A DNA stretch of 64,000 nucleotides, taken from Octopus sinensis. Taxonomy: Eukaryota. This document shows, one piece after another, positions 3,600 to 27,085 of this stretch. The notes below the pieces were generated by a model, which saw nothing but the letters and a program-made list of their open reading frames with translations, searched no databases and was not told the DNA's origin. The position numbers and the translations under genes were made by a program. The stretch spans positions 160,270,001-160,334,000 of the forward strand of contig NC_042998.1 in NCBI RefSeq assembly GCF_006345805.1, in the 5' to 3' direction. Each line of letters opens with the position of its first letter. Position 1 is the stretch's first letter.

Positions 3600-3775
3600 T
3601 CATCATCATTTAGCATCTGTTTTCCATGGCAGTATGGGTTGGGCAGTCTGACAGTAAATAGTAAACCATTGGACTGCACCAAGCTTTGCTGTCTGCTTTG
3701 GCAAGGTTTTTACAGCTGGATGCTCTTCCTAATGCCAACCACCTTACAGAGTAGACTGGGTGCTTTTCACACACA
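3600..3775 (-). mobile_element. RTE-type 3' tail or related SINE, ending in (GAT)n on its own strand
   Basis: catcatcatcatttagc...ccatggc...ggatgctcttcctaatgccaaccacc. Related copies at about 31465-31660 (+), 41995-42210 (-), 47030-47165 (-) and 52290-52535 (+). The RTE link is inference. Confidence 0.55.
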
Positions 3776-4015
3776 CATACATACAGAGTGCAATGGGTAA
3801 ATTGTTGCCATTTTATATTTTTAATTTTGCACATGCACACTGTTTATTTTTGATTTTGCCAGCTACACAGTATAATAGGGTAAGTTGGGCACCTTCTGTG
3901 AGAAAAACAGCATATGATGCAACTTATTCTGCTTGAAATTTGGGAATGACATGCTGTACTGCTTGGCATTCATGCTGGAAGCTCCAATATGAAGTGTCGG
4001 AAGCTTCAATACAAG

Positions 4016-4052
<37 letters not shown>

Positions 4053-4063
4053 CGGTATATATA

Positions 4064-4521
4064 CTGTATATACTGGCATACAAGATGGAATTTGAACTTC
4101 ACAAAAATCGCCCCAAAACTAGGGGTCGTCTTATATAAACTCTGAACCATAACCTCCTGTAGTTTAGAGTATCACCAATGTCAATGTAAAAAATAACCGA
4201 CAACTAAGTGATGTCACAACAGTAGTGCTTACACTATCCAGGTATATTTGTTGTGGATTATAGTAGGTAATTTACAATATCTGGCCACTTTTTGAAAAGA
4301 ACTGGATAAATTTTAGACAACTAAGACTGCAGAATTGTTACATACTAAGTTTACTGATTGAAACATACTTAAAATGCTATTGAAACACAAGAAAAGTAGA
4401 GATTCCAGGAGCTGCTGGGGTAGCTACAGTTCACCTGACTCCTTTAGCTATGAAGCTTGTATGTTTGGTACTCGAGCTAATTTCCACAAAAAGTTAGGAT
4501 AGTCTTATACAGCAAATATAG
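4064..4521. mobile_element. Degenerate Tc2/pogo-type (Kanga-like) MITE
   Basis: Left end TA-ctgtatatactggcatacaagatg with internal ggggtcgtcttata. Right end agtcttatacagcaaatatag is an imperfect inverted copy. Confidence 0.4.
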
Positions 4522-20975: not shown

Positions 20976-23398
20976 TAATACAATTGTTCTTATAATTCTG
21001 ATTATGAAATTTGAAAGGCATCTAAATTCTGTTAATGTGGATAAATGCATGTAAAGCTATGAGCATAAAAGAAAAACATTCTTTCAAGGGGATGAAAAAA
21101 AGTTTAATTCTGTCAGTAATTCTGATATAAGATTTATTTTTCATTTCTAAAACAGGCCAAGATATATATTTCATTCTCTAGAAGCAACCATTTAACTCAT
21201 TTCGTAGTAGCCTGCCTCTGGTTCTGGGATGTAAATATTCTGTTTAAGGTGATCTAAATTAAAACTTCCATCTAAATTTCATGTCAATTTATGTCTCACA
21301 CATCAGTTTAATGAATTTATTTGAACAAAGCTGTTTTTCAAAATTAATTCAAATAAAGGCAGTATAATTCAACAGATATATTGTAACAAAAGGGTTCAGG
21401 TTTACACCAAAATTTAGTTCTAATATCTCAAATGCAGCAAAAACCAAGAAGCAAGGTCTCTACTGGATGTGAACCACATACCTATCATTTGCTGGGCAAC
21501 CAAGCTTGTAATTACTCAGTTTTAAAACCTAATTTACTGCAAGTATTTAAATATTTCACATATCCATTTCACAGAAGTTGTATTATTAAGTAAGTTCAAA
21601 TCTTTTCTATACACAGGAAATTATTGCTTTTCCTGTATTTTATATTTCAAGGCTTTTGACAACAACAAACTTGTGCTGGTGTACGTGACATGTTATCTTT
21701 TATGAACTTTGGTAGAGGTTACAGGGGTTGTGTTTTAATAAGCGAAATTCATTTAAAAAGAAAAGGAAATAATTTTGCTTCAAATATGCTTCATAAGAAA
21801 TTAAACATATTTTGCCCGAGGGGCTGGTTTGAATTCTCATTTGTTAATGAAGATACTTCAACTATTTTACATCTCTGAAGCTCATTAAAATTATACATAT
21901 CTATATATGTGTGTGTATATATGCACACACATGCATACATATTAATATGTGTGTGTGTGTGTGTGTATGTATCTTAATGGTGCTTGGAAATTTTTTAAAA
22001 AATCATGAAAACATGATTAAGAGAAAAATTAGTTTATAATATTTATACTATGTTTACCCTGAGGGTAGAGAAGATCAAGCTTATTAATTGTCACAAAAAA
22101 TTGCTCCTGGTTGTAAAGTTTGTCATTATTATAGACAGCGTGGACATATTTGAATAATCTATTTGTTAAAGATCTAGTTGCTATAAGTGAAACAGATTAT
22201 AGCATTTAATATTTAATAAGGAAGTAGTGTATAAAATTTTAGATTTTGATGAAAATTTTTTACTTTAGAAATACAAAAAGATGTTTGTAAGTGTATACTA
22301 GAAGTATACACTCTCTATGTAAACTAAATATGTTACTGCTAGTGTTGTTGATACAGGTGACTTATTAGGATAAATTGCTAATTCTGGTAACTATCGCTAG
22401 ACTTGTTAGACATTGAATAAAATGGTTTCAAATTTCAGCACGTGGCCAGTAATTTTATAGGGAAGAGTTTAGTTTATATCAACCCCAGTACTCAACTGGT
22501 GTTTATTTTACCTACTCTGAAAGGATGAATGGCAAGTCAATTTTGGCTCAGAAGGTAAAGATCTATAAGAAATACTGCCAAGCATTTTGTCTCATGTGCT
22601 AAATTATTCTACCAGATCACTACTTCAGACATTGAATATAATATAATGCATTGCAATATTTGTTCTTGCTCTATGTCATCTGAGTTCAAATTCTGTCATT
22701 GTTACTTTTTCTTCTTTACACTTTCAAAGTCAATAAATTAAATAATCTGGTAATCAGTGTTGACTCTGCTTCTTTCTGTCTTCCTATTTTTCTCTCACTA
22801 TTACTTTCTCTTTTGAAGAAATTGGTTGTGGATTGACTTGGAGTGAGACGGGTTCCATTAAGTATATAATTTCCCAAGACACACTGTCTCAACTGTATCC
22901 CTATGAAACAAAAAAAAAAAAAAGGAAATTTACGACAGATTTCAATATTTGTCTCCACATTCTTCTTTTTGCTATGTATGTATGTAGGTATCTAGGTAGG
23001 TAGGTAGGTTGGTAGATTACCAACCAAAGTTAAAGAGCTTCTACCTGCTCATGAGGTAAGCTATCCCATTCCAGACATCAAACCAACACTCAAACACTCC
23101 ATAAAGTGATCAAATACCACTCCTGTGACCAATGTTGTGTAGCTCATTCACGCAAAAAAAAAAAAAAAATGTACGATATGTGATTTGCAAATATAAATAA
23201 GAATTAAATATAAATAATATATATAAATATAAGAAAGGAAAAGATATGAAATTTAAAAACATAAATAAAGATTTAAATACAAATAATATATATAAGTAAA
23301 AATATACATATATATACATATAAGAAAAAAAAGTATGATATGCGAATAAGAATTAAAGGGAAGTCCTGGTTTTGTCAATTTTCATGTCACACCAGTGA

Positions 23399-23462
23399 AA
23401 GTCTTCTTGGGCCAGTAGGTGGAGGTAGTGCACTACCCCCACCTACTGGCCCAAGAAGACTT
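23399..23462. repeat. 64-bp spacerless palindrome, one mismatch
   Basis: aagtcttcttgggccagtaggtggaggtagtg|cactacccccacctactggcccaagaagactt. 31 of 32 positions pair, with mismatch A23423/C23438. Confidence 0.97.
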
Positions 23463-23599
23463 GGTAGTATGTGCAATGTATATGGGTGTCTTTTCAGAAC
23501 ATTGTATGGTTTAAAAAGCAATGATGGTTCTAAGGTGTAGGTACAAGAGGTGGTCAAACTCTGCATAAGGAGCAGACAACTGCCCTGTATGTATGGATG

Positions 23600-24371
23600 G
23601 ATGCATGCACTACATCAGATCTAAAAGGTTCTTAAACAAACTGAAAAATCCAGCAGAAGAAGATTTGATTTGGTTTTTCTCAAATGCGAAAAACTTTGGC
23701 GAAGATCAAAAAGTTAACAGAAGAAATGACAGATGGCAATGTGCAGACGCTTCTGAAGTTCCAAGTGTTATGCATACAAAATTGCCTGTAACTGTCATGG
23801 TTGTCAGCATTGACGGACATGTGATGCTTCCTTACTGCTTTCTACAAGGCCTTAGAGTTAACTCTGCTGCCTGCATTGAGGTTCTGGAAACAATTGTTAA
23901 TCTTTGGATAGACAGTATATACAATGGAAGGTCATATGTGTTTCAGTAAGACACTGCACTATCACACATGTTTCTAGTAACACAGGAATGGATGGCTGAA
24001 AATTTTCATGATCGTATAACCCTTAATATTTGGCCTCCTAATTCCCCGGATCTCAATCCATTGGACTATTACATGTGGAGCGTTGTTGAAAGAGAGGTAA
24101 ATGAACACTGACATGACACCAAAGATTCTTTGAAAGCTGCCATAGTCAGAGTAATGTCCAAAATGAACCAGGACCAACTGATTCGAGCATGTGGGTGATT
24201 TAGATCTCATATAGAAGTTGTTGTTGAAGTGGAAGGTGGCTTTATTGAATAACATTATAGAAAAGAAAGTTTATTTTTATCTTCATGGCATTTTTTGATA
24301 AATAAAGTTATCTGTTATTATATATGTTTTTTATAAACATAGATCTGTCCTCAAATATCTTATGCACCCTG
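23600..24371 (+). mobile_element. maT (DD37D) Tc1/mariner relic, left part missing
   Basis: Translation FQ*D-TALSHM...WPPNSPDLNPLD-YYMW has 37 residues between the two Ds. NDR..VMHTK.P.TVMV lies upstream and EGGFIE* ends the frame. The right end is tcttatgcaccctg followed by TA. Confidence 0.9.
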
Positions 24372-27085
24372 TATGTATATATACATATATATATATATAT
24401 ACACACACACATACATATATGCCATACTATGAGGTGGTATAATGTTATCAAGCTCATAAGGGAAGAGTCCATTTAGTTTCATAAAAATACAGAAAAAGTT
24501 AGTAGTTGTATAGTATTAGTGAGTGAAGAGTTGACTATCTGAGAAATGGTATTTACCATGTTTGGGAATTGCAGCTGAGATGGACCATATGTGCAGTCTA
24601 CTTGCTAAAGAAAGCAAATAATGTATCATGATAGGTGAGTGTAGATAGTTAATTATCACTTATCATTTTGATTCTGAATGTTGATTAACCTTTGAATTAA
24701 AAAAGAAAAAAAAAGAAGGAAAAAAGAAAACCTTGAGGATTTTCTTTATTTCGAACTTAGAATGAATACAAACTCTTTTGATTAAAAATATTTGATTTAA
24801 AACATTCAGAGAAGTCTATGTAGATTACTATTGCTTCAATTGTAATTTGGCGTATTTAAACTTTTGATTGTCCTCTGTACTTGCTAAGTTAGTTAAAGAT
24901 TCCATAACTAACTTTTCTTGTTGATGACTAGTTATTACTCATTATGCCTAATTAAATAAATGTGGAGACTGAAAAATGGTGTCAGAGAAAGGTCATACTT
25001 ATGTGTTGTTCAAGGCATTTGGCTTAAGAGGAACCAAGGAGATTTCCGAAGGCTTATTTACGACACCCAAGAGTAGAACAAAAATAATTTCTTACTGGTT
25101 AGATTTTCATTAATGTTCTGACGTCTTTTGAACAGTTAACTTCCCGAAGGTATTTCTTCAATGAGGTAGTTTTGTTTTGTGAATTAGGTCAGGCAAACTG
25201 AAATATGATAAAGACACGACCTTCTAACTTGCTAACTTCAAACTTTCTTTTCTTGTCTCTTTGAGATGAAATTTTCTCGGCTCCAGGTCTGATAAACAAG
25301 ACTTATAATGATTATATGCAAAGCAGTGTAAAGTTGAACCCCAGTGAGGATTGTGTTAAATACAAATACAAAAAAGAAAAGGGTTACTAAAAAATGCATG
25401 CAAAAAATATCATAGGAGTTGTTACTAAGGGAAATGGGAAGAAAAAATAATATTGGTAAAAGAGAATGGGAAAAGAAATGCTGAAGAATAAAGAACAATG
25501 AAAGAGAAAAAATGAAATCTTTTCATCAGCTTTGACACAAGGGACTCACTTAGAAAACTTGCCCTGTTGCCAGCTAGATCTAATAAGGGCATAAATTATA
25601 GGTCAAGTTAGAGAATCCAAAAAGATTTTCTACTGATGGGTGTCAGGGGAGTTTCTGCCGATATCAGAAACTAATGAAGTGTGAAAGCTTCGAAGTGATT
25701 TTGACATAAACAAAATTAAGACAAATTGTGGCGAGAACTCTTGAAAGGAAGCTTGTATGAGCAGACATGGTGGGTAAGTTTGGTGAGATATATCTAGTTA
25801 ACCATAAAATGTTTGCAGGCTTACCCCAACAGCTTCACCTCCCTTCCTTCCCATGTCCAAAGTAACTTTCTGCAATTATCAAATGGTTAGGAAATAGTTG
25901 TTTTGTTAATCGTCAATTTCTGTTTGGCTGAGTACTCAATCAGAAAGCCACAAAAATGGATATACATGGCTTCAAATAAATAATCACTCAACTGAATCTT
26001 ACTTCTGTTCCATTAGTTTCAATCTTTTGGAAATTATCTATTTATTCTTTAGTTATTTTTTTATCAAGGGAGTTGGTGGCCATTTTTTTCTCATCCAGTT
26101 TATTTTTTCCTCTCTCTCTTATATAGATTTTTTTTCTCTTTCAGTCATTTTCTTTCTACATTTCAATGGTTGAGTTATTGTTGCTAATGTAATTTTTTTC
26201 TTTTTTGATTTCTGTTCTTTTTCTTTCTTTTTTTTTTTGTGAGTGCCATCTTAGCACACAAGTTGGTTAACTCATATTATAGATGTGATCTATTTAACAA
26301 CTGCCTGGTTTCTATATCCTTTTGTTTTTACAAATGTCGAATATTTTTTCTTTCTTTTGATACTTTATCTTCCATTCATTCCTTCTATCATCATCACTTT
26401 CTCGACCATCTTCGTCTCCACCCCTCCTCATCACCATTACCACTACAACAACCACCACTGCTATCATCACTAAGACTGCCACCTCTACAATCATCATCAT
26501 CATTTATTTGAATATATATATATATATATATTCAAAAAGTAAATTAAAAATTCCATTTCAAAGAAATCTCATTATCTAGATATTAAAATCTCATTCAGAT
26601 GAAGATGTAGACTTCAAGTGACACAAAAATTTGTTTAATGTAAAATATGGAAAGATAAGCTAAATGGTGTTCATGTTTTATTTAACAGTATGACATACAA
26701 TAAAGTCCTGTAAATCCATGAATGTTAAAAGCAAAGAAACAAATAATACTCTGAATGCAGTTGTTTAGCCCCGGGTTAGAATTGATTCAGCAGATTTATG
26801 ATAAAATGTATTGCAGCTATCCACTTTTTTTTTCACTGGAATAGTGTATCTAGGACTACATTATCTAATATGTCTGCTGGAAGTGTTGGACAATGTCAAC
26901 CAACATGAGTTTTCTCACTTTTGTTTGTTCTTTTAGTAATTGTCATTAGTTTGTCTATCAAGAATATTTATAGAAATTAATAATTTTTTTTCTGTCTTCC
27001 ATCTCCAGTTTTCATTTGTATTGTGTGACAATTTTATATTGGGCTGAAGAATTTAGCATTTCATACATTATTGACATTTATTTAG

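What the first reader, a model, noticed from the sequence alone, without database searches (positions are those of the whole stretch)
23399..23462. 64-bp near-perfect, spacerless, GC-rich palindrome
Seen: 31 of 32 positions pair and the centre is GTAGTG|CACTAC. It is much richer in GC than the flanks, has no flanking direct repeat, and matches nothing else I saw in the window. It lies about 140 bp from the broken left end of the maT relic. Established: long spacerless palindromes extrude cruciforms and tend to be unstable. Inference: a recent inverted duplication (template switch or hairpin-capped break), a tiny fold-back MITE, or a hairpin-RNA locus (~30-bp stem with a UGCA loop). Coleoids have many lineage-specific miRNAs.
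Basis: partly seen in the sequence, partly recalled or inferred. Interest (0 to 1): 0.7.

Follow-up and report, generated by a model that had tools for sequence, protein, structure and literature searches.

The report
Fold-back scar inside a broken LINE
The 64-bp perfect palindrome is real and unique in the octopus genome, but it is most likely a mutational scar: 32 bp of a retrotransposon's 5' UTR were copied backwards at a rearrangement junction, and nothing suggests a gene or a mobile element.

Summary
Observation confirmed. Window 23399-23462 is a spacerless palindrome with 32-nt arms, 31/32 paired, 55% GC against 33.5% in the flanks. It is the only complex palindrome in the window, and its centre occurs once in the 2.72-Gb assembly (Octopus sinensis GCA_006345805.1).

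It is not orphan sequence. The left arm and the 40 nt before it are positions 286-360 of the 5' UTR of a ~3.95-kb RTE-like LINE. The arm alone has 101 other copies in the genome. The right arm is an inverted copy of the left arm made in cis: both share a rare variant.

The turn lies on a self-complementary TGCA in the loop of the LINE's native weak hairpin. One other copy already carries GTAGTGCACTAC there. Six bases after the right arm, the last ~140 nt and (TGTA)n tail of the same LINE family begin. The first 247 nt of the same 5' UTR lie inverted just upstream.

So the palindrome sits at an internal junction of one rearranged LINE copy that lacks ~3.5 kb.

Best reading: fold-back (snap-back or template-switch) synthesis followed by microhomology joining. 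MITE reading rejected. miRNA reading untested, and the shape is poor for Drosha. Assembly artefact unlikely but untested. Low interest.

The parts
22970..23010 (.). (TGTA)n/(GTAG)n microsatellite to the left of the LINE composite. It resembles the LINE's own tail and may be the target or priming site.
   Evidence: A direct repeat of 22970-22991 lies at 23581-23602 (77% identity).
23011..23264 (-). First 247 nt of the LINE 5' UTR, in inverted orientation. Consensus position 247 is at 23011 and position 1 is at 23264.
   Evidence: blastn against the family consensus: 87.4% over 254 columns, E = 4e-88. Alignment.
23265..23358 (-). AT-rich stretch made of extra partial tandem copies of the LINE's AT-rich 5' terminus (consensus ~17-108), in the same inverted orientation.
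   Evidence: (repeats D2, D3, D5).
23359..23398 (+). LINE 5' UTR consensus 286-326, forward orientation, contiguous with the left arm.
   Evidence: blastn: consensus 286-360 matches 23359-23432 at 93.3%. Alignments.
23399..23430 (+). Left arm. It equals LINE 5' UTR consensus 327-358 and carries one private G>A change (GGTGGAGG).
23431..23462 (-). Right arm: an inverted cis copy of the left arm. It keeps the consensus G and shares the rare CCAGTAGG variant with the left arm. The self-complementary TGCA at 23429-23432 is the turn-around.
23463..23468 (+). GGTAGT filler. It is either a second short direct copy of 23423-23428, or LINE 3' sequence CTTGGTGGT with a 9-nt deletion and a 3-nt CTT overlap with the arm end. 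The two cannot be told apart.
23469..23580 (+). Last ~110 nt of unique sequence from the 3' end of the same LINE family: the end of the ORF with a C2H2-like motif, the stop codon and a short 3' UTR.
   Evidence: (2235 first-look candidates, matches start at query 7-10), and (L040 3915-4065, L041 3878-4025).
23581..23607 (+). Degenerate (TGTA)n-type LINE tail.
23608..24394 (+). maT/mariner-type DNA transposon relic. It lacks its first ~485 nt and its right terminal inverted repeat lies at about 24346-24394. It is context, not part of the palindrome.
   Evidence: (Pfam DDE_3, E = 2.3e-7).

Best explanation
The palindrome is a templated inverted insertion, a fold-back or template-switch scar, inside one rearranged copy of an RTE-like LINE.

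Proposed mechanism (inferred):
1. A free or nascent sense-strand 3' end lay in the LINE 5' UTR, at the small self-complementary centre (TGCA, or GTAGTGCACTAC in some copies) in the loop of the element's native weak hairpin.
2. That end turned back and copied about 30 nt of its own upstream sequence.
3. The new end was joined, with 0-3 nt of microhomology (CTT), to sequence ~140 nt from the 3' end of the same LINE. About 3.5 kb of LINE interior is therefore missing.

Shown here: one arm is native LINE sequence, the other arm is its cis copy, the turn-around is self-complementary, both flanks belong to the same LINE family, and the palindrome is unique.

Not shown: which polymerase acted and when. 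I slightly favour post-insertional break repair or replication template switching (snap-back SD-MMEJ, Pol-theta/Pol-delta fold-back, or MMBIR type) over template jumping or self-priming during target-primed reverse transcription, at roughly 55:45.

The inverted first 247 nt upstream fit a separate or concurrent twin-priming-type 5' inversion. I infer no function.
For: 1. The left arm and 40 nt upstream match consensus 286-360 of the LINE 5' UTR at 93%. The family sequence then continues GTGCAAGCTACACCC, whereas the window turns back.
2. The arm occurs 103 times in the genome at 3 or fewer mismatches, which includes the 2 arms here. The palindromic centre occurs once.
3. Both arms share CCAGTAGG, seen in only about 5 of the ~100 arms listed. 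This points to cis copying.
4. The turn is on TGCA in the apical part of the native hairpin (DNA fold -10.9 kcal/mol). Copy L002 natively has the 12-nt palindrome GTAGTGCACTAC and L003 has AGTGCACT. L012, L019 and L021 have deletions at the same spot.
5. The right flank from 23469 is the 3' end of the same ~3.95-kb LINE. Full-length copies L040 and L041 carry both the 5' UTR and this 3' end. The element encodes an APE endonuclease and a reverse-transcriptase fragment.
6. The length fits documented fold-back insertions at breaks, which are mostly ~5-34 bp and use microhomology (PMC11724301). Single-event creation of perfect hairpins by template switching is also documented (PMC10710096).
7. The inverted 5' UTR 1-247, the 38-nt gap and the forward 286 onward have the geometry of a twin-priming 5' inversion (PMC12016303).
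Against: - No orthologous or pre-event allele was seen, so the ancestral state is inferred only from paralogous LINE copies.
- The age test is inconclusive. The arms differ at 1 of 32 positions, while the LINE pieces show 5.8% non-CpG divergence from consensus. P(1 or fewer mismatches if the copy dates from insertion) is about 0.10.
- The 6-nt filler GGTAGT and the 9-nt gap have two competing readings.
- A strictly intrastrand snap-back on TGCA alone would need a loop of under 3 nt. It therefore requires either the 12-nt native palindrome variant or an interstrand switch.
- Raw reads were not available to exclude an assembly or polishing artefact.
Confidence: 0.8

Rival explanations
1. The fold-back arose during retrotransposition itself. 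The LINE reverse transcriptase, or second-strand synthesis, jumped templates or self-primed, so one aberrant target-primed reverse transcription event produced the 5' inversion, the internal 3.5-kb skip and the palindrome together. This is a sub-variant of the best explanation that differs only in enzyme and timing.
For: All pieces (inverted 5' UTR 1-247, forward 286-360, fold-back, 3' end and tail) come from one LINE family. They lie within 600 bp, between two (TGTA)n-like microsatellites. The twin-priming geometry fits. The age test does not exclude simultaneity, P about 0.10.
Against: The order of the arms requires the fold-back to have been made on the sense (second) strand, not on the first cDNA. 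This is my inference: only the left arm continues into more UTR. The arm divergence point estimate (3%) is lower than expected (about 12%) if the copy is as old as the insertion. No clear target-site duplication is present.
Confidence: 0.35
2. Assembly or polishing artefact in the PacBio-based assembly. The true genome would have only one arm.
For: Palindromes are hard to sequence and assemble. Raw reads were not checked.
Against: The arms are only 32 nt and sit between different unique-order flanks, whereas missed-adapter chimeras give kb-scale mirror images. There are no N runs in the window. One arm carries a private substitution, which a mirrored read would not produce. The turn lies on a natural TGCA, with microhomology at the far junction.
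Confidence: 0.05
3. A hairpin-RNA gene: a young miRNA, or an shRNA-like endo-siRNA precursor, born from the template switch and now processed into small RNAs.
For: The RNA hairpin is very stable on both strands: -55.7 kcal/mol on the plus strand, and -59.6 kcal/mol on the minus strand with G.U in place of the mismatch. Template-switch hairpins have given rise to miRNAs in primates (PMC10710096). Octopuses have many lineage-specific miRNAs (PMC9699675).
Against: The stem is 30-31 bp with a 4-nt loop and no extension into the flanks. The stated preference is a 35-bp stem and a loop of 10 nt or more (PMC10710096). Rfam hits are all far below gathering scores, hit many unrelated miRNA families and occur on both strands. 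The arm is not in the held supplements of the octopus miRNA paper, though two of those files were cut when stored. There is no evidence of transcription. The upstream LINE promoter-side segment is inverted and points away.
Confidence: 0.05
4. A miniature fold-back transposon (MITE) made of two abutted terminal inverted repeats.
For: The 32-nt arms are about the size of a terminal inverted repeat, and a DNA transposon relic lies 145 bp away.
Against: The palindrome is single-copy genome-wide and has no target-site duplication. The arm is internal LINE 5' UTR sequence, contiguous with 40 more nt of that UTR. It is unrelated to the maT terminal inverted repeat CAGGGTGCGTAAGG.
Confidence: 0.01

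Closest known systems
[quoted passage not shown]
   Same: An inverted copy of about 30 nt is templated from the sequence immediately next to the junction. The turn uses a tiny self-complementary or microhomologous motif. The far side is joined with 0-3 nt of microhomology and a deletion.
   Different: Those events were observed experimentally in yeast, flies and cultured cells. Here the event is only inferred from a germline genome, and neither the enzyme nor a break is shown. The 32-nt arm is at the upper end of the reported size range.
Replication template-switch mutations that create perfect hairpins (Loytynoja and Monttinen; PMC8794818, PMC10710096)
   Same: A single event converts a weak quasi-palindrome into a perfectly paired hairpin by copying the complementary or nascent strand.
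   Different: Classical template-switch mutations return to the original template nearby and leave the downstream sequence intact. Here the return is about 3.5 kb downstream, or into another piece of LINE, so the event is coupled to a large deletion.
LINE 5' inversion by twin priming (Ostertag and Kazazian 2001; PMC12016303)
   Same: The first 247 nt of the element are inverted and placed just upstream of the forward remainder, which starts 38 nt further on. There is GGTAG/CTACC microhomology at the presumed internal priming site.
   Different: This explains the context (23011-23358 relative to 23359 onward), not the 64-bp palindrome. It is described for mammalian L1, not for RTE-like elements. 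The target-site duplication is not recognisable here.
RTE-type LINEs of octopus, such as RTE-2_OV (PMC9115989)
   Same: A single ORF of about 3.3-3.4 kb with endonuclease and reverse transcriptase, a 5' UTR of about 0.5 kb, and a microsatellite starting right after the ORF.
   Different: Sequence identity with RTE-2_OV could not be checked: no match was found in the paper's held supplements. Clade placement was not tested. The copies examined here are all degenerate.

Membership tests
Fold-back / template-switch templated insertion | The inserted stretch is the reverse complement of immediately adjacent sequence (cis template). | tested here: met
   31/32 complementary with 0 spacer. Both arms share the rare CCAGTAGG variant.
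Fold-back / template-switch templated insertion | A short palindrome or microhomology at the switch point. | tested here: met
   TGCA at 23429-23432. The 12-nt palindrome GTAGTGCACTAC is native in copy L002.
Fold-back / template-switch templated insertion | The ancestral state lacks the inverted copy. | tested here: inconclusive
   All 18 paralogous LINE copies examined and the family consensus lack it, and the centre is unique in the genome. The orthologous locus in another species or individual could not be examined.
Canonical animal miRNA precursor | A stem of about 35 bp with an apical loop of 10 nt or more and single-stranded flanks (as stated in PMC10710096). | tested here: not met
   30-31 bp stem and 4-nt loop. 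The flanks add no pairing.
Canonical animal miRNA precursor | Match to a curated miRNA family at its gathering score. | tested here: not met
   The best hits are mir-627 at 41.7 bits (86 needed) and mir-193 at 29.7 bits (55 needed). Hits occur on both strands and to many unrelated families.
Canonical animal miRNA precursor | Discrete 21-23-nt reads with 2-nt 3' overhangs. | not testable with these tools
   No small-RNA read data were available. The arm strings are absent from the held supplements of PMC9699675, two of which were cut when stored.
MITE / fold-back DNA transposon | Many copies sharing the same termini. | tested here: not met
   The full palindrome is found only at this locus.
MITE / fold-back DNA transposon | Flanking target-site duplication. 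| tested here: not met
   The flanks are ...CAGTGA | palindrome | GGTAGT..., with no direct repeat.
Twin-priming 5' inversion of a LINE (context) | An inverted 5' segment abuts the forward remainder of the same element, with a small gap or overlap. | tested here: met
   Reverse complement of consensus 1-247 at 23011-23264, forward consensus 286-360 at 23359-23432, and a 38-nt gap.
Twin-priming 5' inversion of a LINE (context) | One insertion bounded by a target-site duplication and a 3' tail. | tested here: inconclusive
   A tail is present at 23581-23607. The two sides carry similar (TGTA)n-type microsatellites (77% over 22 nt), which cannot be told apart from a target-site duplication. The maT target lacks 485 nt.
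RTE-clade LINE (source of the arm) | A single ORF with an AP-endonuclease followed by a reverse transcriptase. | tested here: met
   Exo_endo_phos E = 6.5e-13. RVT_1 E = 4.6e-4, below the cutoff but on a fragment. The pieces are collinear in L039-L043.
RTE-clade LINE (source of the arm) | Phylogenetic placement of the reverse transcriptase within RTE. | not tested
   No reference LINE library was available. Only the architecture and the microsatellite tail agree with the RTE description in PMC9115989.

The most novel reading that the evidence does not exclude
A template-switch-born perfect hairpin, caught very young (1 mismatch), that is transcribed, for example from a host intron or on the minus strand where the mismatch becomes G.U. 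Dicer would process it directly into small RNAs that could also target the ~100 LINE copies sharing the arm. That would make it an octopus proto-miRNA or endo-siRNA locus, and a non-primate example of de novo small-RNA gene birth by template switching.
Probability: 0.04. Interest if true: 0.55.

Novelty: new member of a known kind. Interest (0 to 1): 0.2.

Why it matters
Mostly as a clean negative. An eye-catching GC-rich perfect palindrome in an AT-rich octopus region turns out to be a by-product of LINE rearrangement, not a gene or a new mobile element.

It also has modest value as a well-resolved natural example of a ~30-nt fold-back templated insertion. The turn sits on a 4-12-nt native palindrome in a LINE 5' UTR hairpin loop, and other copies of the same family also show deletions and palindrome-lengthening changes at that spot. 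If sampling of the ~100 copies confirmed this, the site would be a natural hot spot for quasi-palindrome instability and template switching in a cephalopod genome.

Tried and rejected
- MITE or fold-back transposon: rejected. The palindrome is single-copy and has no target-site duplication.
- Known RNA family: rejected. Rfam at gathering level gives nothing, and the E-value mode gives only generic sub-threshold miRNA-hairpin hits on both strands.
- Listed octopus miRNA: the arm strings are not in the held supplements of PMC9699675. Two of those files were cut when stored, so this is a weak negative.
- Link of the LINE to RTE-2_OV: no sequence match in the held supplements of PMC9115989.
- Dating the fold-back against the LINE by arm divergence: underpowered, P about 0.10.
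- Looking for the rest of the LINE (consensus 361-1643) or the missing left part of the maT element elsewhere in the window: none found.
- Collection scans of metagenome, prokaryote-genome and viral contigs were not run, because those collections are not expected to hold octopus DNA.

Full report
**Observation**

The sequence at 23399-23462 reads AAGTCTTCTTGGGCCAGTAGGTGGAGGTAGTG|CACTACCCCCACCTACTGGCCCAAGAAGACTT.
- The repeat finder reports two 32-nt arms, 97% complementary, with no spacer.
- As single-stranded DNA the 64 nt fold at -32.7 kcal/mol (z = -11.7). As RNA in 104 nt of context they fold at -61.7 kcal/mol (z = -8.4). The flanks add no pairing.
- GC is 54.7% against 33.5% in the flanks.
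- Every other near-spacerless inverted repeat in the window is TA/CA low-complexity sequence.
- The window has no N runs.

**Source genome**

The window is G000:C2:160270001-160334000. The assembly has 2,719,151,902 bases in 13,516 sequences, and its tenth sequence is 105,892,736 bases long. These figures match those tabulated for Octopus sinensis GCA_006345805.1: 13,516 scaffolds, 2719.2 Mb, N50 105.9 Mb, L50 10 (PMC10700109).

**Copy number**
- Searching the whole genome with the 64-mer returns the full palindrome only at its own locus. About 20 other places match one arm plus a different continuation.
- A 26-nt pattern across the centre, with 2 or fewer mismatches, occurs once per strand and 0 times in the control.
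- The 32-nt arm with 3 or fewer mismatches occurs 103 times, again with 0 control hits. That is 101 loci besides the two arms here.

**What the arm is**

I aligned 18 of those loci. The arm lies in a conserved repeat that runs into an ORF with an AP-endonuclease domain (Exo_endo_phos, E = 6.5e-13), followed by reverse-transcriptase fragments. In my 1,643-nt consensus the arm is positions 327-358 and the ORF starts at 486. The arm is therefore part of a LINE 5' UTR.

In the family, the arm is followed by CAGTGCAAGCTACACCCACTG. This forms only a weak native hairpin, GGTGGGGGTAG...CTACACCCACT, at -10.9 kcal/mol as DNA. The TGCA sits in its apical part.

**What the flanks are**
- Consensus 286-360 matches 23359-23432 in forward orientation at 93%.
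- Consensus 1-247 matches 23264-23011 in inverted orientation at 87%.
- The AT-rich 23265-23358 consists of extra partial copies of the element's AT-rich 5' terminus.
- The right flank from 23469 to 23607 belongs to a very abundant repeat, with 2,235 first-look candidates. In other copies that repeat extends further upstream through a C2H2-like coding end and finishes in a (TGTA)n microsatellite.
- Two full-length copies, L040 and L041, carry the 5' UTR at about 90-240 and this 3' end at about 3,740-4,070 on the same strand. APE, RT and C-terminal ORF pieces lie between them. Both flanks therefore come from one ~3.95-kb LINE family.
- The architecture is a single ORF of ~3.4 kb, a 5' UTR of ~0.5 kb and a microsatellite right after the ORF. 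This agrees with the published description of octopus RTE elements (PMC9115989). Clade membership was not tested, and no sequence match was found in that paper's supplements.
- From 23608 rightwards lies a maT/mariner-type relic (DDE_3, E = 2.3e-7) that lacks its first ~485 nt. The missing part is not in the window.

**Anatomy of the locus, left to right**

| Coordinates | Content |
|---|---|
| 22970-23010 | Microsatellite |
| 23011-23264 | Inverted 5' UTR 1-247 |
| 23265-23358 | AT-rich repeats |
| 23359-23432 | Forward 5' UTR 286-360 (its last 34 nt are the left arm plus TGCA) |
| 23431-23462 | Inverted copy of 327-358 (right arm) |
| 23463-23468 | GGTAGT |
| 23469-23607 | LINE 3' end and tail |
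| 23608 onward | maT relic |

No other part of the LINE, at least of consensus 361-1643, is in the window. About 3.5 kb of LINE interior is absent exactly where the palindrome sits.

**Direction and source of copying**

Only the left arm continues into further UTR sequence, so the right arm is the copy. Two details support this:
- The right arm retains the consensus G where the left arm has a private A.
- Both arms share CCAGTAGG instead of the usual CCAATAGG, a variant seen in only about 5 of the ~100 arms listed. This argues for copying in cis rather than from another LINE copy.

The arm that is followed by non-UTR sequence lies 3' on the sense strand. I infer that the fold-back was synthesised on the sense strand, from a 3' end at about consensus 360.

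**Turn-around and junctions**
- The switch is on the self-complementary TGCA.
- Copy L002 natively reads GTAGTGCACTAC, a 12-nt palindrome, and shares the CCAGTAG variant. L003 reads AGTGCACT.
- L012, L019 and L021 have deletions of 13, 36 and 6 nt at the same place. L019's deletion lies between two TGCA motifs.

The site looks unstable in several copies.

At the outer end of the right arm, the sequence ...AAGACTT|GGTAGT|ATGTGCAAT has two possible readings:
- a second 6-nt direct copy of 23423-23428, or
- LINE 3' sequence CTTGGTGGT with a 9-nt deletion and a 3-nt CTT overlap.

**Mechanism**

The features are an inverted cis-templated stretch of ~30 nt, a turn on a tiny palindrome, minimal microhomology at the capture junction and an associated deletion. 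Together these are the signature of fold-back (snap-back) synthesis at a DNA end, or of a template switch at a fork.
- In yeast such insertions are mostly ~5-34 bp and use microhomology next to the break (PMC11724301). Related snap-back SD-MMEJ and Pol-theta scars are described in PMC5728401, PMC2943611 and PMC7165422.
- Template switching that creates perfect hairpins in one step is documented in primates (PMC10710096; PMC8794818).
- Quasi-palindromes are known fragile sites (PMC3855049).

The alternative is that the LINE machinery produced everything in one aberrant insertion. The inverted 1-247, the 38-nt gap and the forward 286 onward have the geometry of a twin-priming 5' inversion. There is also GGTAG/CTACC complementarity between the left microsatellite and the presumed internal priming site (PMC12016303).

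The age test cannot separate the two. Non-CpG divergence of the LINE pieces from consensus is 5.8%, so about 3.7 arm-to-arm mismatches are expected if the copy dates from insertion. One is observed, giving P about 0.10.

**Rejected or unsupported readings**
- MITE: the palindrome is single-copy, has no target-site duplication, and its arm is internal LINE sequence.
- Known RNA family: only sub-threshold hits to many unrelated miRNA models on both strands.
- miRNA gene: the shape is unfavourable, with a 30-31-bp stem and a 4-nt loop against the 35 bp and 10 nt or more quoted in PMC10710096. The arm is also not in the held supplements of the octopus miRNA study. Expression could not be tested.
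- Assembly artefact: unlikely given the short arms, the different flanks and a private substitution in one arm. It remains untested.

**Verdict**

This is a real, unique palindrome whose origin is ordinary. It is a fold-back templated insertion at an internal junction of a rearranged RTE-like LINE copy, with no sign of function. Interest is low.

The residual novel possibility is a very young template-switch-born small-RNA hairpin. It needs small-RNA reads and the orthologous loci to be settled.

Noticed in passing
window 23606-23613 and 23429-23436: The octamer TGCACTAC, which is the right half of the palindrome centre, recurs exactly at the LINE-tail/maT junction. About 0.01 occurrences are expected within +-250 nt. 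The junction copy is made of the last two tail bases plus native maT sequence. This could be chance, or a microhomology used in the rearrangement.
   Followed up: partly
L012, L019, L021, L011, L002, L003 (about 1530-1545 in each locus), aligned: Other copies of the LINE 5' UTR carry deletions of 13, 36 and 6 nt, a truncation, or palindrome-lengthening substitutions (GTAGTGCACTAC, AGTGCACT), all at the same TGCA centre of the native hairpin. This suggests a recurrent instability hot spot.
   Followed up: partly
window 23011-23358: The first 247 nt of the LINE 5' UTR lie inverted, followed by about three partial tandem copies of its AT-rich terminus. The geometry is that of a twin-priming 5' inversion in an RTE-like element. 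As far as I know from memory, twin priming is described mainly for mammalian L1.
   Followed up: partly
window 23608-24394: A maT/mariner-type transposon relic (DDE_3) has its right terminal inverted repeat (CAGGGTGCGTAAGG...) present but its first ~485 nt missing. The missing part is nowhere in the window, so the LINE event or an earlier one deleted target DNA. The family has at least 1,786 first-look candidates in the genome.
   Followed up: partly
window 23445-23451 (right arm): The right arm contains ACUGGCC, which from memory is the seed of miR-193-3p. Rfam mir-193 scores 29.7 bits against a gathering score of 55, and the opposite strand also hits. I read this as coincidence.
   Followed up: yes
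window 23399-23462, minus strand: On a minus-strand transcript the single A/C mismatch becomes a G.U pair. This gives an uninterrupted 30-bp stem at -59.6 kcal/mol, against -55.7 kcal/mol on the plus strand.
   Followed up: yes
window 22970-23010 and 23581-23607: (TGTA)n/(GTAG)n microsatellites lie on both sides of the LINE composite. LINEs of this family end in (TGTA)n, and many genomic copies have long (ATGT)n tails. This may mean the element targets or seeds such microsatellites.
   Followed up: no
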